This document shows positions 200-63,761 of a DNA stretch of 64,000 nt, in pieces. Made by a program: the position numbers and the translations under genes. The notes under the pieces are model-generated. The model was not told the DNA's origin. It did not search any database and saw nothing but the letters and a program-made list of their open reading frames with translations. The DNA is from Sminthopsis crassicaudata (lineage: Eukaryota), in contig NC_133622.1 of the NCBI RefSeq assembly GCF_048593235.1, positions 257,118,055-257,182,054 of the forward strand, read 5' to 3'. Position 1 is the stretch's first letter, and the number at the start of each line of letters is the position of its first letter.

Positions 200-1990
200 A
201 AATCCGAACTTTTCTTTAAAATCATAATACAGTGGGAGAGCTGGAAGTCCCCTGGCTGCTAATGACCTCTTCCAAGCTCCTCCTCTACCACCACCACTAA
301 TAAACTCTTCTGTTGGGATTCCTTCATCCAAATATCTCATCACATCATCCAGATCCTGAGGCAATTATAAGGAACACCCAACCCCGGGCTCCCAAGGCTG
401 TTTCTCCTCCCCACCTTCTGCCTTCATTTAAGGGAAGTTTCTCATGTATGTCAATGTTTCCTCAGATGCCCTAATTTCCCACGATCTCCTTTCCTTCACT
501 CCATCCCAGCCTCAAACAGACATGTTCACAAGTAGCCTTTCCTGATGAAAAGATAAGCTCTCTCGTCTCTTTGTCTGACCATTGCCCAGAACTGTTGTTC
601 TTTTTCCTTGTTCAAGAACTCCAGAGTTCCTTTAATAGATCATAATTGTTGACCATTCCAGTTCTTTGACTTACTGTTTTTAAAACGCTTTGTCCTCCAG
701 TTCTTTTGTCACTTCCCCTTCCCTCCCTCTCCTCCATTCTCCTTCTTTCCCTATAGCAATTCTGCTCTATGCTCTCCTCTACCCTCTACCCTCGGCCATG
801 GCTTGCCTGAGATGGCAATGGCTCTCACCATCTGCATTCTGGTGTTGAAAAGAGCCAGAGGAGTCCAGTTGGGCTGCCTGGGAGCCCATTGATATGATTT
901 CATTTGCTCTGGGCCTTCACTGCAGCAAAGCAATCCTAGTAATCTTTCCATGGTATCTGCACAGAGGCTGTGGTGGATCTTCCTTTTCTCCTCCAGCCTC
1001 CTCCCCCTTCCCTCTTATCGGAAGGTTTTCATTTTGCTCATCAGAAAAGCCATTGGCCAGGAGCTGCCTCTTCCTTCCTGCTCACTCCTCTGCCATCCTC
1101 TCCTACTTTCTCTCCTTTCCCCGTGTCACATGAAGAGGTGGTTTCTCTCCTTTTCAAGGCAAGGCCCCTTTGTGGATGGGATCCCATCCCTTCTCCCTTT
1201 TTTCAGTACACTGCTCCATCTATTATCCGGCCCTCAGTCACTGGGTTTCAGACTCTCCTGCTGCTCCTGGATCCCTCCCCCTCCCCCATTGCCTACAAAT
1301 ATGGTCCAGAAAACCTTGGGATAACTGGTGATGACCAGAGCCTCATCACCACTAGCTCTTTTCCCTCTTGTGGCCAAACCCTTTGAAAAGGTCTACAGTG
1401 GGTGCCTCCACTTACTTTCCTCTCACTCTGCAAATCTCTGGACTTTCAGCTTCCAACCTCATCCTTTGTCGGAAACTCTCCAGGCTCCAATGGAGACACT
1501 AACCTCCTAACCAAATGCCGTGATCTGTCATCCTTGACTTCCCTGGAGCGTTTGTCACTCCTGATCACCTTGATCAACTAACTAGTCAACGAGGAGCAAC
1601 TTTCTCTGCTAAGCAACTGCCTTTCCTTCAGGAAACCCACTTTTCGGCCTCCTCTTTTGGTTCATCACTCATTTCACACCCACTAAGCAGAGGTGTGCCC
1701 CAGACACTGTCCTGGACCCTTTCTTCTCTCCATACCCTCTCACTAGGTGATCTCATCCGCTCCCCTAGGGGACACATTACCTAGATCTCTGTAGCTGGTC
1801 CCAATATCCCACCTGATCTGGTCCACTTTCCCCGACTGGACAAATCCAACCGCAGGTCCCAGACATTTGAAATTCAACGGGTTTAAAACCGATCTCGTTA
1901 TCTCCACAGTCCACATCCATGCGCTCCCCTTTTTCTTTCAGTCATTTTCATCCTTTCCCTCCCAGGTTTTCAAGCTTGGTTTTAAGCCCA
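200..1990 (+). mobile_element. Old L2 LINE remnant (endonuclease and RT region of ORF2, 3' part)
   Basis: ORF 970-1386 reads FSPFPVSHEEVVSLLFKARPLCGWDPIPS, like L2 RT-upstream FSPVSEEEV..DPIP. 1520-1570 resembles the L2 'LDLSAAFDTVDH' coding stretch and 1861-1910 resembles L2 'ctcaaactcaacatgtccaaaactgaactc'. Many disablements; boundaries approximate. Confidence 0.6.
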
Positions 1991-2029
1991 GTTCAGATCT
2001 GAGCCCCCCGGACTGCCAATGGGACATTC

Positions 2030-3100
2030 AGGGCTGAGCGCGGGAGGGGGGCAGTCGGGATGAACAAGGGCCTGGAGTCCGGGACACCGGACACGTTTTG
2101 CCAGAAGGGAAGGCCTTGGAAGGGACGGGAAAGTCGTGCACATGGACGCGGAAGGCCGCCCCGTCTGCTGCTGCTTGGCCCCCTAAGGCACGGGATGGCC
2201 GAGGGGCTGCTTTAATCCCGGAGGGCAGGACGGGCATCTGGACCCTAAGCGCAGCCCAGAGTGGAGGTGTGGCCGCCGAGCTAAGGCCCCGGCCCGGGAG
2301 GGCTCGGAGCAGGAGCCAGGGCGGCGGACAGCACCCGAACGCTGCGGGCTCGGGGCCTCGGACTTCCTCAGGGGCGGAGATTCTCTGTCTCTAGGGGCGG
2401 CTCTCCTTGGAGAAGTCTGGCTCTTTGGGGGCCATCCTCAAGGGGCAGGTTTGGGAAGATGCGCTTCCGCCTTACCTCAGCCGCCTCAGTTCCTCTCACC
2501 GCCCCAGGCCCCCCCACCCCCCAGACGTGGCCCTGCTTCGGCCTCTCGGGCCTCAGCCCGGCCACCGCAGGGAGCGCGTGGGACCCGTCTCCATGACGAC
2601 AGGGGGGCGAGGCTATTTAACCTAATTGAATATTCATGAGGTCCTGGCTCCAGTCGGAGCGAGTTCTCCCGGTCCTTCCCTAGTAACGGTTGCTGTGCTA
2701 TCGCCCCGCCCCGCCCCGCCCAGGTTACGGACTCCGAGAAGAGCGGAGTCGGGAGGGCAGACGGGGGACCGGAACTGAGAGACTGTGGACCTTTTCTTCT
2801 CGGAAGAGCCAGACTGGAGGCAGAGGCCGGCGGTTAGGGCCCCGGGGCCCAGAGCTCCGAAGAGACCCCAAGACCTCGAGCCAGGCCCCTAACATACCCG
2901 GACACTCAACTCTGGGGGATTCGGGTCCTCCGAGGGGACCCTCACCCCTAAGAACCACGAGGCCCCCTAGAATTATGGGCGACGAGGGTCTCATCAGATC
3001 AGGCGTTCCGAGCCCCCATCTGAGAAAAAGGAGCCCTGAGCCTCCCCCCCCCCCCCCCCGTGAGACCAGAAACCCTGCACTCCCCATCTGCGCCGTCACT
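2030..3100. promoter_or_regulatory. CpG-island promoter with RFX X-box and GC boxes
   Basis: Dense CpG. X-box-like GTCTCCATGACGAC at 2587-2600, RFX half-sites CTAGTAACGGTTGC at ~2679-2693, and three tandem CCCCGCCC GC boxes at ~2703-2720. Confidence 0.6.
2476..2640 (-). other. Putative non-coding first exon of a leftward gene (LRRC56 by synteny, not confirmed)
   Basis: Strong minus-strand donor GAG|gtaagg at 2476/2475 inside the CpG island. 5' boundary is a guess; no LRRC56 coding exon was recognised in the window. Confidence 0.35.
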
Positions 3101-4800
3101 TAAAAAAGGAGCCCAAAGCTCCTCTCCCGTGAGAAGTCTTCCATGAGTCCCTGAGCCCAAAGACCTGCCAGATCCGGAGACCAGGAGCTCTGGGCTTCCC
3201 CCCCACCCAAGAGCCCGGAGTGGAAAGCCCCATCTGAGACATGAGAACTCTGAGCCCCCTCCCCATCTGAAAAAAGCCCTGATTCTCCATCCTCCCCCCG
3301 GAGCTCTGGGCTCCCCCTAGCTCCACTTCTCTGTAGTGTTTCCCGCCTCCCAGAAGCCCAGACCTAGGATCCAGAAGCCCCGAGGCCCTCCCCACTGCCC
3401 CCACCCTGAGTCAGATCGAGGCTGGAGCTCAGAGCTCCCATTCCCACTTGGAAAGCCAACTCCTCCCCCCACTCCCCCCATGACCTCTAGGCCAGGACTC
3501 CAAGGGCCCGTTGTATTTATTTTATCTAGCCACCTGAGAAAGCTTCCCCAGGACTTAGAGGGACGCAGAAATCCTGTGTGGTCTCATGAGTAAAGACTTC
3601 CTAAGGGCTCCACCAGCATCCAGTGCCAAGGACGGTCTACAATTGGAACCTTAAGGGCCTCCTCCCCAAGGAGCAGAACAGGAGCCCTGGGGGGTCTTGG
3701 ACTTAAGTGGACTAAGGAGCTTCTCATGGAGACATTAGAACTCTGAATCCCTCACCTGAGCTCCCCCTTCCTCAGCCACCGAGTTCCCCTACCTGAGACC
3801 CTGGCTATTCCTCAGCCACCGAGTTCCCCTACCTGAGACCCTGGCTGTTCCTCAGCTGCCGAGTTCCCCTACCTGAGACCCTGGCTGTTCCTCAGCCGCA
3901 GAGTCCCCTACCTGAGACCCTGGCTGTTTCCAGGCTTGAGGCTCTATTTCCCCTTCCCTAACATCCTCTCCTGTCCAGTGAAATCAGGGCTCTGAGCTCC
4001 CCTACCAAGAGATCAGGAGGTCTGAGGCACTCCCAAGGACCCCTGAGCCCCAAAAGGGAACTAGGAAGCCCACCCAGCTGACCAGGAGTAGCCTTGAGAC
4101 CCAACCTGAATCACTTGAGGGAACTTGAAGTAGAAAGCTTCCCCCGTCCTCAGACCTGAGAAAAGATGCTTCAAGGGACTCCCTCTCCCCATACCCCACA
4201 AACCCCTGAGACCAGGAGCTTTGAGGCCTTCCATCCTCTCTGAGAACTGGAACCCCAAACACCCTCCCACAGAGAAGCAGAACTCTGGAGGCCTGCTTTC
4301 CGAGAAATGAGTCCCATCACCTGAGCCCAGGGATTCCAAGCCTCCCCACATCATGAGATTAAAAGTTGTGAGCCCTTCCTCCTCAAGATTTGGAAGTGAG
4401 TCTCCTACCAGGAGGCCTGGAGGTCTAAGACCATTCCTCAACCACGAGACAAAGCCTATCCCTCATGGATCCCGGAGCTTCCCTCTTTCCTGAGACCGGA
4501 AGCTTTGCACTCCCCTAGCAGAGATGAGAAAGCCAGAGATCCTTTCCACGACCTGAGATTGGGAGCCCGGAATCTCATTTCTACTGGAGACAGCGCAAGT
4601 CTCCTTCTCCTCCCAAATATCTCTGAGCCCCTCCCCCTACCTGAGGTCTAGGAGTTTACCATTCCCTACTCCCATCTGAGATAATGGAGCCTCAAGACTT
4701 TCTGCCCCGTCCATTTTGGAAATCTTAAGACCTCCCCCCATAGGAGGAACTAGTCCTTTTTCTCCCAGTTTTTATCTGGAACCTTGAGTCTCTTCCCTAA
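2760..4800. repeat. Eroded ancient minisatellite (~30-35 bp motif CTGAGACCAGGAGCTCTGAGCCCCTCCCCAT)
   Basis: Recurrent degenerate ctgagacc/aggagc/ctgagcccc/tcccca motifs over ~2 kb. Confidence 0.5.
3768..3928. repeat. 4 x 40-bp tandem repeat
   Basis: Unit TTCCTCAGCCACCGAGTTCCCCTACCTGAGACCCTGGCT(A/G), four near-identical copies, no spacers. Confidence 0.95.
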
Positions 4801-6116
4801 GATTTCTCCCAGGGTCTAGGAACCCTGAACCCCACTCTACCACCCAAAAGAAACTTAAAATCACTGACCAACTCCTTCCTACCCAGACAAGGGCATCTCC
4901 ATTCCAACTTGGAGAGACAGAAACAGGCAGGAAAGAGAGGAGACATGAAGAAAGGAGATAGAAACAGGAGAGAGAGGATACAGAGAGAGAGAGAGACAGA
5001 CAGACAGACACAGACCTGTGAAGGATTTTAAAAGATTGTTAAGAGGTAACTGGAGCCACCAGTGTTTTCTGCCCAGAGGAGTGATGGGATCAAGTTTGTA
5101 TTTTGAAAAAGGCACCTTTAATCATGACAAAGTTCAAAGCCCAGCATAAGTAATGTTAAAACTTTGCCAAAGGAAGTGCCCTAGGGGAAGACTCCCCAGG
5201 GACACAGGTGATCCTAACAGTTTAAAATGGACAGTGCTGGTTACATGAAATGGAAAAGCTTTTGTGTAGGCAAAATCGATGCCAACTGGGGAAAATCTTC
5301 ACATTTCGCTTATATGATGAAATATTACCCATAAAAGAGCATCTCTAAGAGACACATTGAGTCAACAATTCTCAAATGAAGAAACACATTAACCATAAGA
5401 AAAAGTGCCACAAATCACTAGTGTGAGAAATGCAAGGTGAGCTGACACTGAGGTTCCCCATCCTGCTGGCCAGATGACAAGGAGCATGACTCCTGCTGGA
5501 GGCCTGTGGAGAACAGCACACAATGCCATTGATGGAGCTATGAATTGGTTCAATCAAGGGTGTATACACCCTATAACTCAGTGATACTTGTTTGGGATAT
5601 ATATCTGAAAGGGAGCAAAGAGAGAAGGGAAAGACTTGTATGCCCTAGAATATTTGGAGAAGCCCTTTTTGTTACTTTTTAAAATAGTTTTTTATTTGCA
5701 AAATACATGCAAAGAGTTTTCAACATTCACCCTTGGGAAACCTTGTGTTCCCAATCTTCCTCCCTCCCTTCCTCCCATTCTTCCTCCTAGACAGCAAGTA
5801 ATCCAAGATAGATATGCAATTCTTCTATATATATTTCCACATGTATCATACTGCATAAGAAAAATCGGATCAAAAAGGGGGGAAAAAAGTGAAATTTGTG
5901 TATTATTGTGATCCCCATTCGGTTTCTATAGTATTTTCTCTGGGTGCAGATGGCTTTCTCCATCACACATCCATTGGAATTGGCCATGTCTATCAGAGTT
6001 GATCATTGCACAATCTTTTTGTTGGTGTGTACGTGTTCTCTTGGTTCTACTCATTTCATTTAGCATCACTTCATGTAATCCCTCCAGGCCTTTCTATGGG
6101 AAAATTAGGACAGTAA

Positions 6117-6645
6117 TGTGAGGGGTGTAGAAGACCCTAACCCAAAATGACTACTTAGAGATCACTCAGTAGGAAGGCAGAAAAGTTGTTTATTGAAAAC
6201 CTCGGGAGGATGAGCCGTCCCATGGCGAGATAAGAAAGAGAAAGCTCCTGGTAGGAGGGAGGAAGAAGTAATAAGGATACCCAGCTTTTACACCAGAGAT
6301 TACATCACAAGGAAGAGGCGCTGAGAAGGGGAGGGGGGGCATCTCATTGGTTGTTGCTATTCGGAGAGATTGGAATGGAAGGTTTCTGTTCATAAGTTGG
6401 GGAGCATTGAGAAATAAGTGTCCTCTCCCCTAATTGTTAAACATTGGTGTCAAAGACAGATTAGGACAGAATGTTTTGTTTCCCTTATTCCGAGAGGAAT
6501 CATCAATCAGACCTTCGAACTTCAGATTAACTGAGATGACGGCATTTAATAAGCTAAATATTGATAACAATGAATAAGGATAAATGTCATCATTTCTGGT
6601 TAAGTAAATCTATCTAAAGTTAAGTAAATATTGGCTTGCACACAC
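6117..6645 (-). mobile_element. Probable solo LTR
   Basis: ~520-bp non-L1 segment interrupting L1 sequence, TG...CA-like ends, minus-strand AATAAA (tttatt at ~6190). TSD not identified. Confidence 0.4.
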
Positions 6646-8031
6646 TGTACTTATACAGGTCACAGAGACATAGAAATGATAAAAAAAATACAGAAAAAGA
6701 ATTTAAAATTCCTGTAAGTTCTTCATCTTATCTCTCCATTCCACACAGTGATATATTATTGGGACACAACAGTGGAGTTGTGAGCTGATCCAACCGTTCT
6801 TGAGAGCAATTTGGAACTCTGCCCAAAGGGCTTTCAAACTGTGTAGACCCTTTGATCCAGCAGTGTCTCTAATGGATCTGTATTCCAAGGAGATCTAAAA
6901 GGAGGGAAAGGGACTCACATGTGCAAAAATGTTTGTGGCAGCCCTTTTTGTAGTGGCAAGCAGCTGGAAACTGAATGGATGCTCATCAATTGGAGAATGT
7001 CTGAATAAGTTGTGGAATACTATTTTTCTATTTTCCCACATCCCCTCCAACATTTGTCATATTTTCCTGTCATCTTAGCCAATCTGAGAAGTGTGTAGTG
7101 GTACATCAGAGTTGTCTTAATTTGCATTTCTCTGATCAATAGTGATTTAGAGCAATTTTTTTTCATATGATTAGAAATAAAAGCCCTTTCTATTATACAA
7201 AGAATTAGAAATAAAACGAATGAAAATACATTTGTTAAGTAGTTACTATGGGTCAGGCAATGATTTGTTATCAATAGTCTCCTTGGGGTAGATACCTGGT
7301 AAAATAATTTTTGGTTTAAAGGATAGAGATAACTGAATCATTTTATTTGCATAATTGCAAATGGTTTCCAAAATGGTTCTATTGATTCATACTTCACTGG
7401 CAATGCACTAGTGTGCCTATCTTGCTACAACTGATCCAAAATTGACTGTTTCCAGCTTTGGTAGTTTTTGTTCGTTTGATTAATTGTGAGATGAAACCTT
7501 AAGCTTATTTTGATTTACACATCATTATTAGTGAAAAGCATTCCATCTTTTGAGGATTGTTCATCTCTTCTGACCAACCCTCTCTGATGAAGAAGGGGTC
7601 TTGGTCCTCTGTATCTGTATATCTATCTAGTTGTAGCTAATTGATAATTGCTTCCATATATGGGATACCAAACCCTTATCAGAGAAATTTGATACAGATT
7701 TTTCCTCATTCATCCACTGCCTTTCTTATCCGGGGTGCATTAATTTAATTTGTGAAAAAGCTTTTTGGTTTCATGTAACTGAAGTTATTTTATCTTTTGT
7801 AATTGCTTCTATTTCTTTTTTGGATAAGAATACATCTGCCCATTTCTCTCCTGAGATGGCATTTGTCTCTAGTTTTTGTTTCTTTATCCTCCCCTATGTT
7901 CTGTATTTAGGCCACTAGGTGGCGCCACAGTGAATAGAGTACCTAGTCTGGAGTCAGAAAAACCTGAGTCCAAATAACTTCAGACACTAGCTGTGTGATA
8001 CCTGGACAAGGCCATTTGTCTCAGTTTTGTC

Positions 8032-8066
<35 letters not shown>

Positions 8067-9290
8067 GACTTTTATTTTCAAAATAAATGCACAGATAATT
8101 TTCAACATTCAGTCCCGCAAAACCTTGTGTTCCAAAGTTTTCCCCTCCTCCCACTCCCTCCCTTAGATAGCAAGTAATCTAATATATGTTAAACATGTGC
8201 AATTCTTCTATATATATATTTCCATTGTTCTATACATATTCTATAGCTATTCCACTTATGTTGCACAAGAAAAATCAGACCAAAAAGGAAAAAAAAATGA
8301 GAAAGAAAACCAAATGCAAGCAAACAAAAAGAGTGAAAATGCTATGTTGTGATCCACATTAAGTTCCCACAGTCCTCTCTCTGGGTGCAGATGGCTCTCT
8401 CCATTGGAGAGTGGCCTGAATCTTCTCATTGTTGAGAAGAGCCACGTTCGTCAGAATTGATCATCATATAATCTTCTTGTTTCCTTGTACAACGATGATC
8501 TGGTTCTGCTCACTTCACTCAGCATCAGTTCCTGTCAGTCTCTCCAGGCCTCTCTGAAACCCTCCTGCTGGTCGTTTCTTACAGAAAAATAATATTCCCT
8601 AACATTCATATCCCATAACTTATTCAGCCATTCTCCATCTGATGGGCATCTACTTAGTTTCCAGTTTTTTGCCATTACAAACAGGGCTGCCACAAACATT
8701 TTTGCACATATGTGTCCTTTTCTCTCCTTTATGATCTCTCTGTCATACAAGCCAGTAGAGTCTGCTGTATCAAAGGGTTTGCAGAGTTTAATAGCCCTTT
8801 GAGCATAGCAAATTGATCTCCAGAATGGTTGAATTACTTCATAACTCTACCAACAATGTATTAGTGTCTCAGTTTTCCCACATCTGCTCCAATATTTGTC
8901 TTTTCCTATCATTTTAGCCAATCTAAGAGGTGTGTAATGACTTAATTTGCATTTCTCTAAGTGATTTAGAGTACCTTTTCATATAACTAGAAATAGTTTC
9001 AATTTCTTCATCTGAAAATTGTTCATATCATTTGACATTTATCAATTAGAGAATGGCTTGAATTCTTATAAATCTGAGTCAATTATATATTTTAGAAATG
9101 AGGCCTTTATCAGAACCCTTGAATGTAAATTTTCCCCCAGTTTTTTGCTTTCCTTCTAATCTTGTCTGCATTAGTTTTGTTTGTACAAAAACTTTTAAAC
9201 TTAATATAATCAAAATTATCCATTTTGTATTCAACAATGTACTCTAATTCTTTTTTGACCACAAACTCCTTCCTTCTCCATAGATCTGGG

Positions 9291-25279: not shown

Positions 25280-29525
<4,246 letters not shown>

Positions 29526-29905: not shown

Positions 29906-30070
29906 CTCGGTGTGGCTGTGGGGGTCAAGGGGGGGCCCCAAGGAGCAGCCCGTCCCTAGGTATGGAAATGGGGGAGGGGCATCTGGCTCCTGCCTTTCCC
30001 CAAGGGAGTCTAGCCCACTGCGCGGGGCAGGCTCTGAGCTGGTGGGGAGGGGCCCAGAATGGGCAGGGGC

Positions 30071-30300
30071 AGGGCTGTGAACCCGGGGGTCTCTGCATTT
30101 GGGGGGTGCCCAGAAAGGGCCGGGCTCTGGGCTCCAGGGGGGATGCCCAGGCTGGGCAAGGCAGGGCTCTGAACCCGGGGGTCTCTGCATTGGGGGTGCC
30201 CAGAAAGGGCCGGGCTCTGGGCTCCAGGGGGGATGCCCAGGCTGGGCAAGGTAGGGCTCTGAACCCGGGGGTCTCTGCATTGGGGGTGCCCAGGAAGGGC
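30071..30300. repeat. ~2.5 x 90-bp tandem repeat between the convergent HRAS and TBC-gene 3' ends
   Basis: Unit AGGGCTCTGAACCCGGGGGTCTCTGCATTGGGGGTGCCCAGAAAGGGCCGGGCTCTGGGCTCCAGGGGGGATGCCCAGGCTGGGCAAGG(C/T). Confidence 0.92.
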
Positions 30301-30456
30301 CTTTAGGAATAAGGAGACGCCACAGAGAGGGTCTTTTCTGCAGACGCCTTTACTGGCAGAGCCATCTCTGGTCTTTCAGTGGGCCCTCCTGGGTCGTACC
30401 ATTTACGCCCGGTGCGGGTCCCATTCTCTAGCAGGCCCCGCCCGGCCCCGTGTCCC

Positions 30457-33400
30457 TTAAACGGGCCCTGGCGTGAGCCCCAGGTCACAGCCGCCCTCTC
30501 TGTCCAGGGCCTCCTGCGGGGGGCGCTCTGTGCCCAGGGGCAGCAGGGGGCCAGCTCCACCTGGGAGCTGCCCTTCTTGCCCCAAGTCCTGGCCAGCCTG
30601 GGCCCTGCAGAGGCTGGGGCTGCTCCGCGGTAGGCCCCGGGGGCTCGTGCCCAGGAAGGGCGAGGAGGGTGCGGGAGTGGCCAGGCTGGGCATGCTGGCC
30701 CAGTGCCTGGGCGGGAGGCTGCTGGGGGCCGGCCCCGGGCCCCCCGCCCCCTCGAGAGCGTGGTGCTGGGAGGGCGGGGGGGCAGACTGCTCTGGGGTGC
30801 CGGGAGGAGGAGGGGGAGGGCCGGCGGGATAGGCGTCCTCATCGGGAACACTTTCCAGGGGCAGCAGCTCTTCAGGGGATGGGGGAGGAGGGAAGCGGGC
30901 TGCATCCAGCTCCGGGGGGCCACCCCCTGCCGGCCTCCCCTCCTCGGGGGAAGCCGGGGCTTGGGGGGCCGGGCCCGAGGAGGCCGTAGGTCCGGGCCGC
31001 GCGCCAGCTTCTTCCGGGTCTCGGCTGTCCGGCTGCTGGGGCTCCTGAGGCTGGGCACAGGGCGCATCTTCGGGGGGCACAGGAGGCTGGCTGGCTGGTG
31101 CGGGGCTGAGGGTGGGGCTCTGGGTGCGTGCTGCTTTGCTCTGCCCATTAATCACAAGGCCCAGGGAGAGGTCCACTCCCAGAGGTTTCTTGGGGAGCTC
31201 CTCCAGTTTGGCTGAAGGAAAAGAAGGCAGTGGGCATTCGGAGCCCCAGCCACCCTCCCTGACCCGCTGGGGAATGCGCCGGTTCTATAAGGGAGGGCCG
31301 GGACTCGAACCCAGAAGCCCAAACCCTGGCCTGGGCAGCGATTGTTAGAGCGCCAGCTCCCCGGGAAGAGGGCTGCCTCAGGAGGCTTCCGGCTGTCCCC
31401 TGAGCTGGCAGCCCCCCAGGCCGCCCTCGGCCGCTCTGGCCCTGCCGGGCAGGCTGTCCCCCGGCCCCCCCGGGCCATCTCCTGCTTGCCCCGCTGCGGC
31501 CCTCCTCGGGGGTCTCTGCCTGCGCGCCTCCGGCCTCGGCCCCCGTGCCCACCTGGCGGGGGCAGCTCGCACTTCATTCGGCGCAGCTCGGCCATGGACG
31601 CCTGCAGGTGGTCCAGGACCGCGTCGTCTTCGTGGGGCCACGGGCCGGCCAGCTTCTCCTGCAGAAATTCTCGGAGCTCCTCCAGGGACATCTTCAGCAG
31701 GCGCTCTGGAAATCCAAGGGGGGCGGGCGGTGAGCCCCCGCCCGCAGCTCCTGCCCCCCCACCCGAGCCCGGGGTCCTTACTCCTGTGCAGCTTGAGGAC
31801 TGTGTAGGCCATGGCGGTGAGAACCCTCTCGCCCTCCAAGATGTACACGTCCCACAGGCGCAGGGTCAGGGTGAACGGGGTCTGTGGAGGAGAGGCGGGC
31901 TGAGAGGGGGTCCCCGGGGGTCCCCGCCCCCCAGGCCCTGGAGCAGGCGGGGGCCCTGCCGTCCTCACCCGGTCGATGAAGCACTGCAGGAACCACTTGG
32001 TGGTGTAAATGCCGGTGGACATCTGTTCCTTGTCCTGCGGGGAGAGAGAGGAGATGGGGGCTCGCCCTGAGCCGCGGTGGGCACCCCTGAGCCCACGGTG
32101 GCACTGGCCCGTGCCCGCAGGGCCCGCGCGCTCACCATGTGCTTCTTCAGCTTGGGCAGGGCCTTCCCCAGGATCTGCTCGTGGTGGTCCTGGAAGCGCT
32201 GCAGCTTGGGGAATCCGGGCGTGAAGAAGCCTGTGGGGAGCCCACGGGGCAGAGGGCTCAGCAGCAGCTGGGGAGAGAGCCCGGGAGCCACCTCGGCTTC
32301 ACCCCCTGCCCGCACGGGGGCGGGCTTCCCCAGTGAGCACGGTGCCCCCGGGCAGTGCCAGCTGCAGCCCCAGCCCCCCCCAGACTCCACGCTGAGAGCG
32401 GAGTTGGTCCGGGCAGCCCCCCTCCCTCGCCCCCAGGGAGGAGGGGGGGAGGGGCGGGCACTCACCGTGCATCGCGTGCTTCTGATTGGCCAGGAGCTGG
32501 GCCAGCGCCCAGAAAGCCTCCTCTTCGTTCAGGTACATCAGCAGGATGGCCGCGATCTGACTCATGCCCTGGCAATAGCTAACCTCCTGCGGGGCGCCCG
32601 CGGCCAGACACACAGAGAAGACTTGGGGGGGAGGGGGGCACCTCCCCCTCCCCAGGCTCCGCGCGCCCCTCCCCCCGCCACCCCCACCCCCCCGCCCGGG
32701 AACCCCCGGCTCACCGTGTTGTAGACGGAGTAGGCGGCCAGGACGTGGAACAGCGCTTGCTGCCTGGGGAGAGAGGGGGGTCCGTGGTCTCGGCGGCCGC
32801 CCTGCCCGCTCTCCGGCCTTCCCACCCTCGGCAAAGGGCGCCCCCCGGCGGTCAGGCTGGCCCGCCCGCCACTCACTTCACTCCGTAGCGGTCGCGGAAC
32901 ATGATGTGGTTGCGGAACGTCCGGTGGATGTCCAGGTCGATCTGCCTGATCTCAGAAGAGAAGCTCTGGGCCTTCTCCTTCATCTCCTGCGGGGGCGGCG
33001 GCGCGTCAGGGCCGAGCCCAGCGAGGGGAGCCTGGGCTGGGGCCGCCCGTGGACGAGGCAGCGAGGGGCTCCGGCGCTCCCCTCCGGCCTCCGCCCCCCG
33101 CGCCCCGTGCGCTGCCCTTCTGGGGGCTCCGGGGCCCCGTGCTTCTCCCCCAGTCCGCCTCTGGCTGGTGCTACCTCACCCGCAGCTTTGCTCCTTTTGT
33201 TTTTATTCTGCCGGGTCTCCCCTCCCTCCCTCCGTCCGCCCGCCGGGCACCACTGCGGGCTGCAGTCTTTGTAAGGCTCACAAATAGCCCGGCTCCTCTC
33301 CGGTCTCAGGGCCCGCGCTCTCCCGGTGCGGCCCACCCCCGTCGCGGCCTGGGGCGGTTCTGTCCCGCGTTTCAGGCCGCTGAGCCCCCCCACCACAATC

Positions 33401-36400
33401 AGCCCTGTTCAGCCATTCCCCAATTGCCGCTGGGCTGGGAATCCTAGCCCTCCCCGCCCCACCGAGCCGCTTGTAGAACCCGCCCCAGGGGGGTGGGGGA
33501 GGTACTGCTGGAGCACGGAACATCCTAAGGAGGCTTGGGGCGTAATTCCAGATTGTTCCCAGGAGGGTTGGATCCCCCCCCAGTCCGCTAGTGTCCCGAC
33601 TTCCCCCCCTCCTTCCACCATTTATTGCTTTCCCCTCAATCACTTTAGCCAATCTGATAGGAATAAGGTTTTAATTTGTTTCTCTCCAGTCTTTCATATG
33701 ACTCTATAAAATCTGATTTCATCAAAAATTTGCTGATTTATAACCTTTGACCACTTGTCAATTGGGGAATGACTTGTATCCTATTAGATTCCACCAAGTT
33801 CTCTATTCAGCTGGATAGGAGACCTTTATCTGAGAAACTATCAAATCCCTCCCCCCCATCTTGGGCTTTCCTTCTGATCTTTGCCACATTGGTTTAATTT
33901 GCATAAACCCGCTTAAGATTGAACAGAATCAGAATTATTTTCCACCCCACAGTAATCTCTTATATATTCATAAACTGTCAGCTCCTCATGGAGGTTCTTC
34001 CAGGTTCTCCTCACTTTCTTAGGTCATCTCCCTTTACATCTAGGTCACAGCTCCCTCTGGACCTGATCTTGGAAGTTTGCTTCTTATTGCACCTTCCCCC
34101 GCCATGCTCTCCTCTCCAGTCCCATTGCTGCTCTGTCCCTCCCCTCCCCCCAACGTGCTTTGTTCAGAGTGGGGGCTTCCCCCGGGGCCCTCTCCCTTCT
34201 GTCCTTGTGGACGCTGCCCGTCCTTCGAACTCCTGGCGGGCAGACGCTGCCTCCAGGAAGCCTTCCCGGGGCCGGCTCAGCGGGCAGAGCTTCCCCTCAG
34301 CCCTTCTCTGTCTTCCCTCCTCTGAGGCTAAGCTCCGGGAGAGACTCCACTCTGGTGCCCTCCCACCCCTGGGCCCCTTACTAAGTACACAGTAGGTGCT
34401 TCATAAAGCTTGCTGGATGTGGGCTGGTTCAGGTGACTGCTTCATCTGGAGGATGGCATTAGGGCAACTCTGGGGACCCCGGGGGTGGAGGTGGCCCGGG
34501 CTGGCACCTGCTAGTCCATGATGGTGGAAGAGGGAGGGGTTTGGTGCCCAGAGCCCTGATCCCTGAGCTTGGCGGCTCTGGGTGAATCCGGCACTTTTTC
34601 GACGTGAAACCTGGGCACGCTGCTTGGACTCGCTCCCTGTTTCCCCCTCAGGAAAAAGGGGAATCCTGACTGTCCCCCCCTCCTCCAGAGTGGCAGGAAG
34701 GCGGGCAGGGAAGAAGCATTTTTAAGCACCTCCTGGGTGCCAGGCAACATGCTGAGCCCTTTACAAAGACTCAGTTGATCCTTGTAATGGCCCCGGGCAC
34801 GAGCACTGTTTTAGAGTCGTGGAAGCCGAGGAAGCTGGGAGAGAACCCTGCGGCTTCCTCAGCATGGGGGGAGGGGCTGAGCCCAGAGGAAGGCCCGGAA
34901 CGAGTGGGCTCGGGCTGGAGGTGGGGGAGGACGGGCCGGGACCTGCGACCCGGCTGGGAAAGCCACTGAGAGTCACAGGGCAGGGTCTCCTACCTCATAT
35001 TTGCCGGGGTTTTCTGTCTTCACCTTCTCCACTTCCAGGAGGAGGGACCAGACTTGGCCCCGCACCTGCAGAGGGATGCCCTTGTAGACCCTTCGAGCCA
35101 TCTGAGGGAAGAGAGAGGGCACCGGCCCTTGGAGCGGGCACCCACTGGCCAAGCGGGTCCCTACAGGAGGTGCCCTGGCTCCTTTCCCCAGCCTGCACAG
35201 GGCCAAGGGACAGGAGCCTCCCTCCCCCTGTATCTCTAACTCTGTGACCTTTTCCCAGCCTTGGAGGCCCAGTTCAGGCCCTGCCTCCTCCAGGCAGCTC
35301 CCCCGGGCCCAGCCTCCTCATCTGGTCAGTCAGAAGTCACCTTTGCTTTTTGGAACCTCCTGCTGAACTCTGTCCTCCACCCCAGCCTGTGTTTGCCCCC
35401 CATATCCGCATATGTACCCGCCCCCCCAACTCAGACATACACATTCATACCCCCACCTATACATCCATATCTACACCCTGTACCCCAATATACACACCCC
35501 ACCCACATCTATACCCTGTACCCCCACATACATGTCCCCACATATATATCCTGTACCCCCAAACACAGTCCCCAGCCCCCCATACCTATCCCTCCAAGAC
35601 ATTTTTTTATTTTACTTTATTTTTTTTATTTATTTTATTTTTTTTTATTATATATTTTTTATAATATTATCCCTTGTATTCATTTTTCCAAATTATCCTC
35701 CCCTCCCTCTACTCCCTCCCCCCGATGACAGGCAGTCCCATACATTTTACATGTGTTACAATATAACCTAGATACAATACATGTGTGTAAATCCCATTTT
35801 CCAAGACATTTTTCTAGGAACTCTCTCTCGGTTCCCATCTCCCAGTGCAGGGCTCTAGGACTCAGCACGCTGAACAAGTAGGGAGAGAATGGAGGGAGCC
35901 ATCCCTCTCATTTAGCCAGGAAGGAGTCCAAGGAATATCTGACTAAGGGGGACTGACTAATCTGCCCCGGCTCCCAGGCTCCCACTGCCCCGGCCCCCGC
36001 GGCCCCCGCTCCGGCCTCCTACCTTCTCACTGTGCCGGTATTTATCCCATTTCTTCAGCATCTTCAGCCACTTGTCCACCCGCTCGATCTCCTGGAGCTT
36101 TTGCTGAAAAATGAAGTCCGAGTGTCCGCAGGGCGGGGAGTCCCTGGAGAAGTGCCCCCAGACACGCGGAGAGGGGACCCAGCGGCCCTGCGGGAGAGCC
36201 GCCCCTCGAGGCGCCCTGCGCCCGAGTACAAATCTGGACAGAGGGGCTTACTACTGCAAGGGGCGGTCCGGAAAGATGATAAGACTGAAGGACGAAGGGG
36301 GAGAGAGAGATGCTGGGGATCGGAAAGGGACAGGGAAGGGAAGGAGAAGGGGATGGGGAAGAGGAAAGGGAAGAAGGGGGAAGGGTGGGGAAGGGAAAGG

Positions 36401-37380
36401 AGAAAGGAAAGGGGAGGGAAAGGGAAGGGAGAAGAGGAAAAGGAATGGGAAGGGAAAGAGAAGGGGGAAAGGGAAGAGAAAAAGCGAGGGGCTAGAGCCT
36501 GCAGCACCTCTCGGGCACAGCCGGCCTCCTGCCTTCTGGGGAGGGGTCCCCAGCCCCCTTCTGCAGCCCTCTGCTGGCTCTCACCTTCTCCTCCAGGGCG
36601 CTGTGGCTTGGCAGTTCACTCTCACTGGGAGGACAGAGGAAAAGGATAGTGAGGGCCCCCCTAGGACAAAACCCTCCAGGAGCTGCCCTGGGGCAGGGGT
36701 CTCGGGTCGGGCCTGGGGCCCCTCCAAGTCCACCGGTGACGGGACCCCTGGCAAGCACCAGCCTCTTCTGAAGTCTCCTTGTCTCTAAATTGGGGGGCTG
36801 GCTCTCTGTCCCTCCGCACTCCCTATCTGGGACTCTGGGTTTGGGGGGCTTGAGGGCCGGGGTGCCCGTCTGAACAGCCAGCCCCAACCTGGAAAGCTCT
36901 CAGCCTTCCAGGACAGCGCCTCTGGGGGCATCTGGGCCTGCCTGCAGGACAGTGGGGTGCACGGGGCCCAGGGCAGAGCACTTACTGTAGAAACCCAAAC
37001 CGGTCCGTGACTTTGTAAAGGGCGAAGTCTGCGTCCTCCCAAGGGTCGATCTGAGCCCCATGCTGTCTCCCCTGTAAAGGGAGGGGGGCTCAGGGAGCCG
37101 CCTGCCCCACGCTGGGCCTCCCCCCTCTCCCAGCGCCGCCGTGGGGCGAGCTCTACCCACCCCCACTCTTTCCTGGAAATCCGGGCCCACTCAGGCCTGC
37201 CCACCGGCCCCGGATCCCTCAGGCTGGGGACCTCGCTGCTCGGGAAGTGGAGGGGCGGAGGGCTCCGGGAAGGACTGAGGGGGCTCGGAGCGGCTCCTGT
37301 AGACAGCGCCTCACCTTCCGGTACTTGGCAATGATTTCAGCTCTCTCCTCGGAGACCAAAACCTCAACGTCCTTCTTCAT
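30457..37380 (-). CDS. USP6NL/TBC1D3-family TBC-domain Rab-GAP paralogue, 609 aa from the ATG at 37380, 13 coding exons
   Basis: Exons on the minus strand: 37380-37315, 37071-36986, 36624-36585, 36103-36023, 35101-34994, 32986-32877, 32763-32715, 32586-32466, 32230-32136, 32034-31969, 31881-31782, 31705-31553, 31211-30457. Total 1830 nt, phases consistent, internal introns all GT-AG. Motifs [52 protein letters not shown] (R-finger), EVSYCQGMS (Q-finger), [24 protein letters not shown]. Confidence 0.93.
35607..35799 (-). mobile_element. Young L1 3'-end insertion in a TBC-gene intron
   Basis: Same family as 13580-14367; 14-bp TSD TCCAAGACATTTTT at 35593-35606 and 35800-35813. Confidence 0.9.
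36295..36490. repeat. Polypurine/polypyrimidine (GA-rich) tract
   Basis: About 190 bp of nearly pure A/G on the plus strand. Confidence 0.85.
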
Positions 37381-38214
37381 GTCCAGGGAGGGGAGGCGAG
37401 AGAAGCCCCTCCCCCGCTCTGTGCTCACAGGCACCCCTGCCACAACAGCCCGAGGAAGGAGAGAGTGAAAAGGGATGAGAAGGGAGGGGAGGGGAGGGGG
37501 GGGAAGAAACGGGAGGGGAGGGGCGGGGTGCACCAGCTGGGCCTGCCTTCTTTGGCTGTCCACGATCCTGGGCCAAGGCCAGGCAGGAGAGCCTGGTGCA
37601 GTGGACACACAGGGAGACATTCCCTCGGGGAAAACTGGAAACCGACCAGCGGGGTCCTGGGGGTCCACTCAGCCACCCACAGGGACGCGGGCCTTTGCTC
37701 TACCAGCTCCGATTTCTGGGCCCTGTGGGGGCCGCTCAGGGACCCAGAACCGCAGCCCCTGGAGCAGAATCACAGGGTCAGCCCTGGTTACAGCGTCCCT
37801 GCCTGCCGTCCTCCAAGAAAGGAGAGTCTACCAGCTCCCGAGGCAGCCCGTGTCACACTGGGACAGCTGTCAGCCTCAGCAGTGGTTTCCTGGCTTCTGG
37901 CTTCCCTCAGCCTCTCTGTCACCCTCCCCCACCGGGGGGGCCCCACCAAGCTCTCCAGATCCCCAAAGATGGCTGAATGCCCCCCAGGTCCTTCAACTGG
38001 CTCTCACGTGGCAGGCCCCTCCTGGGACCACTGGAGTCAGCCTCAGACCCCTCCTGGCTACCTCTCACCCCTCTCTGCCTCAGTTGTTCTGTCTGTGAAA
38101 TGGAGCTAAGAGGAGCCCCAACCTCCCAATGATGCAGACCCACAGCAGCAGCTGGGGAGATCCCCTTCCTCCTGGGACCCGTGACTGAGCCTGAAGCCCC
38201 CTTCTCAGGCCAGC

Positions 38215-39175
38215 GCATGTATGCATGTATGTGTGCTTGTGTGCATGTGTGTATATGCACACGTAGAGGTATGCTTAAGTCTGCAGTGCATGTGTATTTG
38301 TACATGTGTGCATTGTACACATGGGTGCACTGCACATGTGCATGCGTGCTTGTACGTTTGCAGGTATGTTTGTGTGCAAGTTTGTACATGTGCACAGGGC
38401 TATGGTGCATGGGTGCACTGTGCGTGTGCATGCGTGTTTGTACCATGCAGAGGTTTTTGTGTGCACACTTGTACATATTCACAAATGCATGCGTGCCTGG
38501 GTGCACTGTGCTTGTGCATGTGTGCTTGTACTATGCAGAGGTTTTTGTGTGCATACTTGTACATATTCACAAATGCATGGGTGCACTGTGCGTGTGCATG
38601 CGTGCTTGTACTATGCAGAGGTTTTTGTGTGCATACTTGTACATATTCACAAATGCATGGGTGTACTGTGCGTGTGCATGTGTGCTTGTACTATGCAGAG
38701 GTTTTTGTGTGCATACTTGTACATATTCACAAATGCATGGGTGCACTGTGCGTGTGCATGCGTGTTTGTACTATGCAGAGGTTTTTGTGTGCATACTTGT
38801 ACATATTCACAAATGCATGCATGCATGGGTGCACTGTGCGTGTGCATGTGTGCTTGTACTATGCAGAGGTTTTTGTGTGCATACTTGTACATATTCACAA
38901 ATGCATGTGTGCATAGGTGCACTGTGCGTGTGCATGCGTGCTTGTACGTTTGCAGGTATGTTTGTGTGCAAGTTTGTACATGTGCACAGGGCTATGGTGC
39001 ATGGGTGCACTGTGCGTGTGCATGCGTGTTTGTACCATGCAGAGGTTTTTGTGTGCACACTTGTACATATTCACAAATGCATGTGTGCATGGGTGCACTG
39101 TGCGTGTGCATGCGTGCTTGTACTATGCAGAGCTTTTTGTGTGCACACTTGTACTATGCAGGGGTGTTTGTGTGC
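38215..39175. repeat. Purine-pyrimidine-alternating minisatellite, 80-bp monomer with a 592-bp higher-order duplication
   Basis: GTGCACTGTG starts at 38581, 38661, 38741; variant block CGTTTGCAGG...CAGGGCTATGG recurs at 38355 and 38947. Confidence 0.93.
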
Positions 39176-62616: not shown

Positions 62617-63761
62617 ATGAGCCTGGACATTCAGTGTGAGGATCTGAGCACTGCCCGCTGGACGGAGCTTCTTCCCTCTATGCAGCAGTATGGCGTCATC
62701 AGGTAGGGACTGGCTCCTGCTGTGGCTGTGGGGACGGGGGTAAGGGGGCCAGCTGTGGCGGTCCCCCGGGCCTCTCCAGAAAGGGGGGCCCCTTTTGCCC
62801 TTGGGGTTCCCGGGCCAGGCGGCCTCTGGGGGCCCCACTTCTGACCCGGCCTTCGTCTTCAGGCTCGACGACTGCGGCCTCACAGACGCCATGTGCGCCA
62901 AAATCAGCTCCGTGCTCCAGGACAACTTGTCCCTGACAGAACTCAGCCTCGCCAACAACGAGCTGAGGGACTCGGGGGTGCAGATGGTGCTGAGCGGCCT
63001 GCAGACTCCCACCTGCAAGATCCAGAAGCTCAGGTGAGTGCCTCGGGTGGGTTGGGCTGCAGGAGCTGCCCCTGCCTGGGCCGAAGCGGGAAGCACTCGC
63101 ACCCCCGGTCCCCGCCCCGCTTTGTGGCCCTGACCCCGGGCGCCGCCCCCGTCTCTGCCAGCCTGCAGAACTGCAACATCACGGGCGCCAGCTGCGAGCT
63201 GATCCCGGCCCTGCTGCGCACCAAGTCCACCCTGACGGACCTGCAGCTGAGCGACAACCACCTGGGCGACGAGGGCGTGAAGCTGCTGTGCGAGGGCTTG
63301 ATGGACCCCAAGTGCAACCTGCAGAGGCTGGAGTGAGTGCCCGGCCCGGGCCCTCCGGGCCGCTGGGATCAGAGCAAGGGTTAGGGGAGAGGTTGGGGGG
63401 GCAGCCGAGGCCGTAGGAGGGGGTAGGGAACGAGGGGTTGGGAGGAGAGGGGTCGGGTTTGGACCTGGGGCGTCGATCCGAGAACGGAGAGCAATAGAGA
63501 TCGGGGCAGGAAAGGCAGAGCAGTCACTGCATGGCGGGAGGAGGGGCCGGGGCGGCCGGGGTCCTCAGTGCCCTTTGCCCTCCCGGCCAGGCTGGAGTAC
63601 TGCGAGTTCACCTCTGCCAGCTGCGAAGCTCTGTCCTCCGTGCTCAAAAGCAAGAACTCCCTGAAGGAGCTGACCCTGAACAACAACGAGCTGGGCGAGG
63701 CCGGGGTGCTCCTCCTCTGCCAGGGCCTGATGGAGCCCAACTGCAACCTGCAGGTCTTGAA
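62617..63761 (+). CDS. RNH1: Ribonuclease/angiogenin inhibitor, first 4 coding exons (gene continues beyond the window)
   Basis: Exons 62617-62702, 62863-63033, 63162-63332, 63591-63761 (86, 171, 171, 171 nt; phase-2 171-nt LRR exons). [20 protein letters not shown]...LDDCGLT...[16 protein letters not shown]...[20 protein letters not shown]. Confidence 0.97.

What the first reader, a model, noticed from the sequence alone, without database searches (positions are those of the whole stretch)
30457..37382. Catalytically intact Rab-GAP between HRAS and RNH1 that looks like a pro-orthologue of the primate TBC1D3/USP6 family
Seen: a complete intron-containing TBC gene with both catalytic fingers (IDLDIHR, YCQG). 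Compared from memory, several segments match TBC1D3/USP6 better than USP6NL: ENPGKYEEMKEKAQ vs TBC1D3 KNPGRYQIMKEKGK (USP6NL ETRDLYSKLKHRAR); [11 protein letters not shown] vs ALVQLLASERH; [12 protein letters not shown] vs [12 protein letters not shown]; [24 protein letters not shown] vs [24 protein letters not shown]; ESELP vs ETELP; predicted start MDM as in USP6. Known: TBC1D3/USP6 are GAP-dead, primate-expanded, linked to EGFR-Ras signalling and cortical expansion, and are usually described as USP6NL derivatives. I know of no protein-coding gene between human HRAS and RNH1. Inference: the family descends from this older, active paralogue, which moved or was lost from the HRAS locus in the human lineage.
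Basis: partly seen in the sequence, partly recalled or inferred. Interest (0 to 1): 0.85.

Follow-up and report, generated by a model that had tools for sequence, protein, structure and literature searches.

The report
HRAS-linked RabGAP, likely TBC1D3 ancestor
This marsupial window carries an intact, expressed gene for an ancient sister of the trafficking regulator USP6NL, and this sister lineage, not USP6NL itself, is most likely the ancestor of the "primate-specific" TBC1D3/USP6 genes linked to human brain expansion.

Summary
A 13-coding-exon, 609-aa TBC/RabGAP gene lies on the minus strand (ATG 37380, stop 30457-30459). It sits tail-to-tail with HRAS and about 25 kb upstream of RNH1. Every intron is GT-AG, and RNA contigs from four studies confirm every junction. 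Both catalytic fingers (IDLDIHR, YCQG) are intact. One correction: the start is MKK..., not MDM.

The window is marsupial. The gene belongs to a shark-to-mammal paralogue ("B") that databases auto-name "USP6NL-like". In an ML tree, mammalian USP6NL ("A") falls outside the B clade. Eutherian B genes (donkey, mustelids, canids) are fast-evolving. In two mustelids no HRAS lies within 10 kb of the gene. In canids the family is massively amplified.

TBC1D3/USP6 sequences could not be retrieved, so the decisive tree was not run.
- Wombat B is 41-45% identical to TBC1D3/USP6 by Foldseek, against a published 34% for USP6NL-TBC1D3.
- At 29 informative A-versus-B sites, a recalled TBC1D3 sequence sides with B 25:4.

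I rate descent of TBC1D3/USP6 from B at about 75%. No paper found describes this paralogue or this origin.

The parts
30457..37380 (-). Whole coding span of the TBC/RabGAP gene (609 aa, 13 coding exons)
   Evidence: Gene model. All junctions seen in RNA contigs of 4 runs.
37315..37380 (-). Coding exon 1 (aa 1-22, [22 protein letters not shown])
   Evidence: The loose end at 37073 in all 4 RNA runs carries the reverse complement of this exon's 3' end.
36986..37071 (-). Coding exon 2
   Evidence: joint 36624/36986.
36585..36624 (-). Coding exon 3 (..[13 protein letters not shown])
   Evidence: joints 36103/36585 and 36624/36986.
36023..36103 (-). Coding exon 4
   Evidence: joints 35101/36023 and 36103/36585.
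34994..35101 (-). Coding exon 5 (start of the TBC domain)
   Evidence: joints 32985/34993 and 35101/36023.
32877..32986 (-). Coding exon 6. It holds the arginine finger IDLDIHR (codons 32941-32921).
   Evidence: Pfam RabGAP-TBC. D144, D146 and R149 are invariant in 40 family members.
32715..32763 (-). Coding exon 7
32466..32586 (-). Coding exon 8. It holds the glutamine finger YCQG (codons 32577-32566).
   Evidence: Pfam PF00566 E=3e-12. Y184, C185, Q186 and G187 are invariant.
32136..32230 (-). Coding exon 9
31969..32034 (-). Coding exon 10
31782..31881 (-). Coding exon 11 ([16 protein letters not shown]..)
31553..31705 (-). Coding exon 12 (post-TBC helices, ..[19 protein letters not shown])
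30457..31211 (-). Coding exon 13: proline-rich tail (aa 359-609) plus the stop codon. It contains FPPPP (30894-30880) and the mammal-conserved W-A-S-M-P-S-L motif (30702-30682).
   Evidence: (joint 31211/31553).
30350..30456 (-). 3' UTR, about 107 nt, as far as the RNA contigs reach
   Evidence: Contig record positions 751-862 lie on 31100-31211, so position 1 of the records maps to about 30350.
27183..29525 (+). HRAS coding exons, tail-to-tail neighbour. Its stop codon is about 0.93 kb from the TBC gene's stop codon.
   Evidence: The same arrangement, a 189-aa Ras gene on the opposite strand just downstream, is seen in opossum and wombat.
62617..62706 (+). First coding exon of RNH1 ([29 protein letters not shown]). 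LRR exons follow at 62.9-63.7 kb.

Best explanation
The window, from a dasyurid-like marsupial, encodes an intact, transcribed dual-finger TBC-domain Rab GTPase-activating protein. I call its family 'B'.

What is shown:
- B is a paralogue of USP6NL/RN-tre ('A'). It is present from sharks to mammals and is very slowly evolving outside eutherians.
- In marsupials B sits 3'-to-3' next to HRAS.

How it most likely works (inferred): like USP6NL, it inserts the Arg (IxxDxxR) and Gln (YxQ) fingers into the active site of a Rab43-type Rab to switch it off. The proline-rich tail probably recruits partners.

What happened in eutherians (shown for carnivores and donkey):
- The same gene accelerated in evolution.
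- No HRAS lies within 10 kb of the gene in the two mustelids examined.
- It amplified in some lineages, most strongly canids.

The primate TBC1D3/USP6/TBC1D26-28 family is most likely the primate branch of this eutherian B lineage. That branch has lost both catalytic fingers. It is not a primate-age copy of USP6NL. This last step is inferred, not shown.
For: Gene and expression:
- Gene model.
- All splice junctions appear in RNA contigs from 4 studies.

Domain and catalysis:
- Pfam RabGAP-TBC hits on individual exons.
- The catalytic D, D, R and Y, C, Q, G residues are invariant in 40 family members.
- An AF2 model of the wombat orthologue, which is 96% identical to the window protein, superposes on the solved USP6NL TBC-RAB43 transition-state complex 9ltp at TM 0.82-0.84 and 64% identity.
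- RN-tre acts on Rab43 (PMC2064371).

B is a distinct ancient paralogue:
- Orthologues occur in marsupials, about 100 birds, tuatara, teleosts and a shark.
- In the ML tree with invertebrate outgroups, B is monophyletic (91/94) and mammalian USP6NL (metatranscriptome cDNA L006) lies outside it. A+B together have 93/96 support.
- Window-to-shark B identity is 77%, against 65.5% for window-to-mammalian A.

Eutherian orthologues:
- Donkey, mustelid and canid genes are sister to the marsupial genes (95/94, 92/94) on a long stem of 0.26.
- Otter versus ferret dN/dS is 0.19 in the TBC region and 0.69 in the tail.

TBC1D3 link:
- Foldseek against Swiss-Prot AFDB models gives wombat B 45% to USP6, 41-43% to TBC1D3A-L and 50% to TBC1D26.
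- The published USP6NL-TBC1D3 identity is 34% (bioRxiv 10.64898/2026.01.14.699559). A gene copied from USP6NL in primates cannot be closer to B than to USP6NL.
- One search listed 71 sites where the non-eutherian B consensus differs from A. At the 29 informative ones, TBC1D3 as I recall it matches B at 25 and A at 4. The B matches include states that are derived in B relative to invertebrates: S110, E116, N122, Q231, I272, R309, A343.
- TBC1D3 also has B's length where A has a one-residue deletion.
- It shares eutherian-B derived states A26, P29, A63, K339 and R342.
- NCBI's automatic names for some canid copies are 'TBC1D3B-like', 'TBC1D3K-like' and 'USP6-like'. A bird orthologue is named 'TBC1D3G-like'.
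Against: - No TBC1D3 or USP6 sequence was obtained from a tool, so no tree or AU test includes them.
- The site count rests on a sequence recalled from memory. It is validated only in aggregate: it gives 42.7% identity to wombat B against Foldseek's 42%, about 40% to donkey B against 41%, and 35.6% to USP6NL against the published 34%.
- The 34% figure comes from a different method and possibly a different region than the Foldseek figures.
- Donkey B is not closer to TBC1D3 than wombat B is (40-42% against 41-43%). TBC1D3 therefore lacks most changes of the donkey+carnivore stem. The idea needs most of that acceleration to post-date the split from primates.
- Guitart et al. 2024 (PMC11610581) found no TBC1D3 in mouse lemur by BLASTN.
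- Co-existence of a USP6NL-type gene with B in marsupials was not shown here.
- GAP activity and the Rab target are inferred only.
Confidence: 0.75

Rival explanations
1. The literature view. TBC1D3/USP6 arose in simians by segmental duplication of USP6NL followed by very rapid divergence. On this view the HRAS-linked gene is an unrelated older paralogue that primates simply lost.
For: - This origin is stated in PMC6920530 and in bioRxiv 10.64898/2026.01.14.699559, on the basis of 13 of 14 shared exons.
- TBC1D3 is absent from mouse lemur by BLASTN.
- Donkey B is no closer to TBC1D3 than wombat B is.
Against: - Shared exon structure is equally expected for B, which shows the same 13 coding-exon hits in the tinamou orthologue.
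- TBC1D3/USP6 are 41-45% identical to wombat B against a published 34% to USP6NL.
- At diagnostic sites the recalled TBC1D3 sequence carries B states 25:4. It lacks USP6NL-derived states such as ETRDLYSKLKHRAR, which are verified for A.
- A has a one-residue deletion that TBC1D3 does not share.
Confidence: 0.15
2. The gene is simply the marsupial orthologue of USP6NL, as its database name says, and there is no separate paralogue. The distance to human and mouse USP6NL would reflect acceleration of USP6NL in eutherians.
For: - All orthologues are auto-named 'USP6 N-terminal-like protein'.
- I did not retrieve a second, USP6NL-type gene from a marsupial, bird or fish.
Against: - Eutherians carry both kinds of gene. 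Donkey, mustelid and canid B genes are sister to marsupial B (95/94, 92/94), while mammalian USP6NL (L006; human and mouse) lies outside the whole shark-to-mammal B clade.
- The tails are unrelated: a 244-aa tail here against about 460 aa in A, with 28% local identity.
- Human USP6NL is not next to HRAS (general knowledge, not tested here).
Confidence: 0.05
3. TBC1D3/USP6 descend from neither A nor B. They would come from a third ancient paralogue that has otherwise been lost.
For: - TBC1D3 matches neither A nor B at about half of the diagnostic sites.
- It lacks the donkey+carnivore stem changes.
Against: - TBC1D3 shares B-derived states and eutherian-B-specific states (A26, P29, A63, K339, R342, using the recalled TBC1D3 sequence).
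- No third paralogue appeared in any search.
Confidence: 0.05

Closest known systems
USP6NL / RN-tre (human Q92738; PDB 9ltp, TBC domain with RAB43-GDP-AlF3)
   Same: - Same fold: TM 0.82-0.84.
- 64-65% identity over the first ~365 residues.
- Both catalytic fingers present.
- Same N-terminal helix and post-TBC helices, followed by a P-rich tail that begins ..DLPxP.K...
   Different: - A separate gnathostome-wide clade.
- One-residue indel (GRQHGAQ against GRE-GAE).
- Diagnostic blocks differ: ENPGKYEEMKEKAQ against ETRDLYSKLKHRAR, and ELPPPAKLEE against DLPEPGKEDE.
- The tail is 244 aa and unrelated in sequence, against about 460 aa in USP6NL.
- It lies next to HRAS in marsupials.
TBC1D3A-L / USP6 (N-terminal part) / TBC1D26 (primates)
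   Same: - 41-45% identity over ~360 collinear residues (B5-360 = TBC1D3 7-362), and 50% for TBC1D26.
- From memory of the TBC1D3 sequence, these shared blocks: NPG.Y..MKEK, ALx[24 protein letters not shown] and a tail W-x-S-M-P-x-L motif.
- Total length is 549 aa in TBC1D3, against 556-618 aa in eutherian B proteins.
   Different: - The window gene keeps the Arg and Gln fingers. TBC1D3 has lost both (from memory), and its GAP activity is described as equivocal (PMC6920530).
- It appears single-copy here and in opossum and wombat (one copy seen per locus), not embedded in segmental duplications.
- It is slowly evolving.
Carnivore and donkey 'USP6NL-like' genes (e.g. otter P0183, ferret P0184, donkey P0195, canid copies)
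   Same: - Orthologous clade in the ML tree.
- Same exon layout.
- Fingers intact in most copies.
- TBC region under purifying selection in mustelids (dN/dS 0.19).
   Different: - 64-71% identity only, on a long stem branch.
- No HRAS within 10 kb.
- A tandem array of ~16.8 kb period near a fox chromosome end.
- Copies on contigs of 13 or more different lengths in arctic fox.
- Some copies are broken.

Membership tests
TBC-domain dual-finger RabGAP | TBC/RabGAP domain | tested here: met
   Pfam PF00566 hits on exons 6, 8, 9 and 11. Orthologues carry precomputed PF00566 and PF23436.
TBC-domain dual-finger RabGAP | Arginine finger in IxxDxxR and glutamine finger in YxQ | tested here: met
   IDLDIHR at aa 143-149 and YCQG at aa 184-187. 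These residues are invariant across 40 family members.
TBC-domain dual-finger RabGAP | All-helical TBC fold superposable on a solved RabGAP-Rab complex | tested here: met
   The AF2 model of the 96%-identical wombat orthologue has pLDDT 79 and matches 9ltp_A at TM 0.82/0.84.
TBC-domain dual-finger RabGAP | Stimulates GTP hydrolysis on a Rab | not testable with these tools
   Needs a biochemical assay. Rab43 is inferred by analogy with RN-tre (PDB 9ltp).
USP6NL orthologue group (A) | Groups with mammalian USP6NL rather than with other vertebrates' B genes | tested here: not met
   The B clade (shark to mammals, 91/94) excludes mammalian USP6NL L006.
USP6NL orthologue group (A) | Long USP6NL-type C-terminal region (~460 aa) | tested here: not met
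   The tail is 244 aa. The best local match to the L006 tail is 28% over 149 aa of low-complexity sequence.
TBC1D3/USP6 family (as pro-orthologue) | TBC1D3/USP6 branch with or inside eutherian B in a supported tree | not testable with these tools
   No TBC1D3 or USP6 sequence was returned by any search. Only Foldseek identities are available.
TBC1D3/USP6 family (as pro-orthologue) | TBC1D3 closer to B than to USP6NL | tested here: inconclusive
   41-45% against a published 34%, but the methods differ. The 25:4 site count uses a recalled TBC1D3 sequence.
TBC1D3/USP6 family (as member) | Loss of catalytic fingers and location in primate segmental duplications | tested here: not met
   The fingers are intact. 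The gene appears single-copy next to HRAS in three marsupials.

The most novel reading that the evidence does not exclude
The 'primate-specific' or 'hominoid-specific' TBC1D3/USP6/TBC1D26-28 family is not a young offshoot of USP6NL. It is the primate remnant of an ancient, catalytically active RabGAP gene that still sits beside HRAS in marsupials. In eutherians this gene began to evolve fast and became prone to lineage-specific amplification, independently in canids and in simians. In primates it also lost its GAP fingers.
Probability: 0.72. Interest if true: 0.72.

Novelty: new member of a known kind. Interest (0 to 1): 0.64.

Why it matters
TBC1D3 is a leading candidate gene for human cortical expansion, and its origin is still described as unresolved. 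[quoted passage not shown]

If the family descends from the B paralogue, several things follow:
- There is a concrete ancestral gene with intact catalysis to compare against.
- There is an outgroup for dating the loss of GAP activity and for tests of selection.
- There are non-primate models of the same gene lineage: marsupials and birds for the conserved form, and canids for an independent amplification.
- The apparent burst of change shrinks, from 34% to about 45% identity.

Separately, B is an uncharacterised, highly conserved vertebrate RabGAP. It is missing from mouse-centred work and hidden under the USP6NL name.

Tried and rejected
1. A representative-library search with the 250-aa tail gave no hits at all, probably because of low complexity.
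2. I tried to fish TBC1D3 with carnivore C-terminal regions chosen to share words with it. Fox residues 67-106 and sea-otter residues 341-380 returned only carnivore copies plus donkey.
3. Searches for printed TBC1D3 peptides in papers and in the Guitart supplements found nothing.
4. The metagenome scan gave a mammalian USP6NL cDNA (L006) and invertebrate outgroups, which were useful, but no TBC1D3. The prokaryote-genome scan gave one unrelated TBC gene.
5. The four-point distance test from Foldseek identities was inconclusive. The quantity d(donkey,A)+d(wombat,T) minus d(wombat,A)+d(donkey,T) came to about 0.09. That lies between the expectation of 0 for a USP6NL origin and about 0.2 for TBC1D3 sharing the whole donkey+carnivore stem.
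6. I looked for synteny of eutherian B with HRAS or with anything else. Only repeat-derived matches appeared between the window and loci L001-L005. The otter and ferret flanks have no annotated neighbours and only spurious GC-rich ORFs.
7. No HRAS lies within 10 kb in tinamou or eel. The eel neighbour is a YhhN/TMEM86-like gene.
8. The protein-atlas look-up was uninformative.
9. Rfam found nothing in the window.
10. Earlier notes of this scan held nothing for this place or these words.
The three-way site count was therefore made by hand against the column table.
Full report
**The observation**

On the minus strand between 37380 and 30457 there is a complete gene of 13 coding exons. All introns are GT-AG, and the phases fit a single 1830-nt reading frame of 609 aa.

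The start is MKKDVEV. The in-frame codons just upstream read S-L-D, so 'MDM' would need a CTG start. B10K bird models also begin 'DMKKD', so the upstream Asp codon is conserved. Only the ATG is a canonical start.

Pfam recognises RabGAP-TBC in exons 6, 8, 9 and 11 taken singly.

Assembled RNA contigs of about 2.35 kb, from four runs of four different studies of the same organism, skip exactly the modelled introns 2-12. They end at 37073 with letters that are the end of exon 1. The gene is therefore transcribed and spliced as modelled.

HRAS (27183-29525, + strand) ends 0.93 kb from the TBC stop codon, tail to tail. RNH1's first coding exon starts at 62617 on the + strand.

**What organism and what family**

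A search with the stop-free frame that covers exons 10-11 showed that the window is marsupial. The Antechinus 'USP6 N-terminal-like protein isoform X3' is 98.7% identical in the TBC region, wombat 95.6% and opossum 90.7%.

The same search returned about 100 bird proteins, tuatara, many teleosts (including si:dkeyp-19e1.3 and si:ch211-288d18.1) and a shark. The blocks EN.GKYE.MK and DLPPPAK.EE.P.KPLG recur in most of the sequences that cover those regions.

In opossum and wombat, a 189-aa Ras-family gene lies 0.5-1.4 kb downstream on the opposite strand. The HRAS linkage is therefore shared by American and Australian marsupials.

**Distinct from USP6NL**

The PDB holds human USP6NL 1-367 in a transition-state complex with RAB43 (9ltp). 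Its printed alignment to wombat B shows the USP6NL-specific blocks: ETRDLYSKLKHRAR, LVKLFSGPKH, NLRIWDIYIFEG, DLPEPGKEDE. It also shows a one-residue deletion in USP6NL.

A metagenome scan yielded a contiguous mammalian USP6NL cDNA (L006, 804 aa) and several invertebrate homologues. In an ML tree (LG+C20+F+G4) rooted on the invertebrates:
- the vertebrate genes form one group (93/96);
- within it, the 18 B proteins from shark to mammals are monophyletic (91/94), with mammalian USP6NL outside.

B is therefore an ancient paralogue, not the marsupial USP6NL. It is strikingly conserved: 77% identity between the window and shark B, against 65.5% between the window and mammalian USP6NL.

I did not retrieve a USP6NL-type gene from a marsupial. 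That leg rests on the tree and on general knowledge.

**Eutherian orthologues**

Carnivore and donkey proteins are the sister group of marsupial B (95/94, 92/94), on a long stem of 0.26 substitutions per site against 0.06 for marsupials.
- In mustelids the gene is under purifying selection in the TBC region (dN/dS 0.19) and relaxed in the tail (0.69).
- No HRAS exon lies within 10 kb of the otter or ferret gene. The ferret locus also carries an inverted, broken copy.
- In fox the gene forms a tandem array with a period of about 16.8 kb, lying 43-83 kb from a chromosome end.
- Canid copies sit on contigs of many different lengths, 13 or more in arctic fox.
- NCBI's pipeline named some of these copies 'TBC1D3B-like', 'TBC1D3K-like' and 'ubiquitin carboxyl-terminal hydrolase 6-like'. 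It named one bird orthologue 'TBC1D3G-like'.

**The link to TBC1D3/USP6**

Three lines of indirect evidence remain.

1. Foldseek identities. AF2 models of wombat B (pLDDT 79) and donkey B (pLDDT 76) were searched against Swiss-Prot AlphaFold models.
   - Wombat B: USP6NL 64%, USP6 45%, TBC1D3A-L 41-43%, TBC1D26 50%.
   - Donkey B: USP6NL 58%, USP6 44%, TBC1D3A-L 40-42%, TBC1D26 45%.
   - The TBC1D3 alignments are collinear (B5-360 = TBC1D3 7-362).
   - The published USP6NL-TBC1D3 identity is 34%.
   - If TBC1D3 had been copied from USP6NL in primates, it would have to be closer to USP6NL than to any B protein, whatever the rates. The numbers point the other way. The caveat is that the methods, and perhaps the regions, differ.

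2. Diagnostic sites. One search lists the 71 alignment positions where the non-eutherian B consensus differs from mammalian USP6NL, with invertebrate states for polarity.
   - I read these against TBC1D3 as I recall it. The recalled sequence is 549 aa. It reproduces 42.7% identity to wombat B, about 40% to donkey B and 35.6% to USP6NL, matching the tool and literature values.
   - 29 sites are informative. TBC1D3 carries the B state at 25 and the USP6NL state at 4.
   - Seven of the B matches are states derived in B: S110, E116, N122, Q231, I272, R309, A343.
   - Two of the four A matches are ancestral states that eutherian B or the invertebrates also carry.
   - TBC1D3 also has B's length at the USP6NL deletion.

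3. Position within B. TBC1D3 shares five states that are derived in all eutherian B proteins: A26, P29, A63, K/R339 and R342. These give the 'AG.P', 'EAK' and 'LKHLRASM' blocks. It lacks the changes common to donkey plus carnivores: P102, F198, M212, G273, K282, A/T286. That is the pattern expected if TBC1D3 branches from the eutherian B stem before Perissodactyla and Carnivora diverged, where a primate orthologue should sit. It also explains why donkey B is not closer to TBC1D3 than wombat B is.

**Weaknesses**

- The key sequence is recalled, not retrieved.
- The distance-only four-point test is inconclusive.
- Guitart et al. found nothing in mouse lemur by BLASTN. This needs either loss of the gene there or divergence beyond DNA-level search.

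**Mechanism**

By homology with RN-tre/USP6NL, the window protein is most likely an active RabGAP for a Rab43-type Rab of the endosome/Golgi pathway. RN-tre is a Rab43 GAP and is now solved with RAB43-GDP-AlF3.
- Shown: an intact gene, expression, the fold, and conservation of the fingers.
- Inferred: catalytic activity, the target Rab, and a role of the tail. The tail has FPPPP at aa 465-469, conserved in Australidelphia, and W-A-S-M-P-S-L at aa 529-535, recognisable in opossum and carnivores.

**Novelty**

The gene is predicted in many genomes under the USP6NL name. I found no paper describing this paralogue or proposing it as the source of TBC1D3:
- searches for usp6nl2, the zebrafish clone names, USP6NL-like and TBC1D3-like gave nothing relevant;
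- current papers still derive TBC1D3 from USP6NL and call it simian-specific.

Orthology databases, which I could not consult, may already imply the relationship.

**Verdict**

The gene is a real, ordinary-looking but uncharacterised RabGAP. Its evolutionary implication is interesting and probably correct.

Noticed in passing
window 27377-28618: A 1.2-kb tandem array (units of about 25, 48 and 96 nt, GACTGTGACCCCCCCAGGACCCCA-like, 77-81% matches) fills the intron between the first two HRAS coding exons.
   Followed up: no
window 30052-30301: A 90-bp unit repeated 2.7 times (94% matches) lies in the 0.9-kb gap between the HRAS and TBC stop codons. This is the position where human HRAS has its 3' minisatellite (from memory). 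It probably falls in one or both 3' UTRs.
   Followed up: no
window 38320-39154: An 88-bp unit repeated 9.8 times (87% matches), rich in TGCA and GTG, lies about 1 kb upstream of the TBC gene's first coding exon.
   Followed up: no
window 35500-35900 (intron 4 of the TBC gene): RNA contig depth here is 100-9000 against 10-200 on the exons, with loose ends at 35698-35801 and an A-rich run at 35599-35664. This looks like a dispersed, highly transcribed repeat (SINE-like), not part of the gene.
   Followed up: no
L001 (red fox, chromosome CM108138.1, 43.5-83.1 kb from the end): There are at least three head-to-tail copies of the B gene with a period of about 16.8 kb near a chromosome end. Canid copies occur on contigs of many different lengths, and several have broken motifs (e.g. 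GYSQSMS in P0160). This is an amplification parallel to primate TBC1D3.
   Followed up: partly
L003 22.8-26.2 kb (ferret): An inverted second copy lies tail-to-tail with the intact ferret gene. It has an in-frame stop (EEDAF*AL) and degraded motifs.
   Followed up: no
window 30894-30880 and 30702-30682: The tail holds two motifs. FPPPP (aa 465-469) has the form of an Ena/VASP EVH1 ligand and is conserved in the dasyurid, wombat and Dromiciops. W-A-S-M-P-S-L (aa 529-535) is also seen as WTSMPSL in opossum, WNSLPTL in canids and CSSLPNL in mustelids.
   Followed up: partly
L006 (ERZ786672 NODE-773, 2706 nt): A metagenome assembly contains an intronless, near full-length mammalian USP6NL transcript (804-aa ORF), presumably host RNA. 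It served here as the USP6NL representative.
   Followed up: yes
L005 20957-29177 (conger eel): The eel B gene is followed on the same strand by a YhhN-family (TMEM86-like) gene rather than by HRAS. HRAS linkage is so far shown only for marsupials.
   Followed up: no
alignment position 183 of B (window codon for S183, exon 8): All non-eutherian B proteins, from shark to marsupials, have Ser before the YCQG finger (EVSYCQG). Eutherian B, USP6NL and the invertebrate homologues have Gly (EVGYCQG). This is an apparent reversal on the eutherian stem.
   Followed up: no
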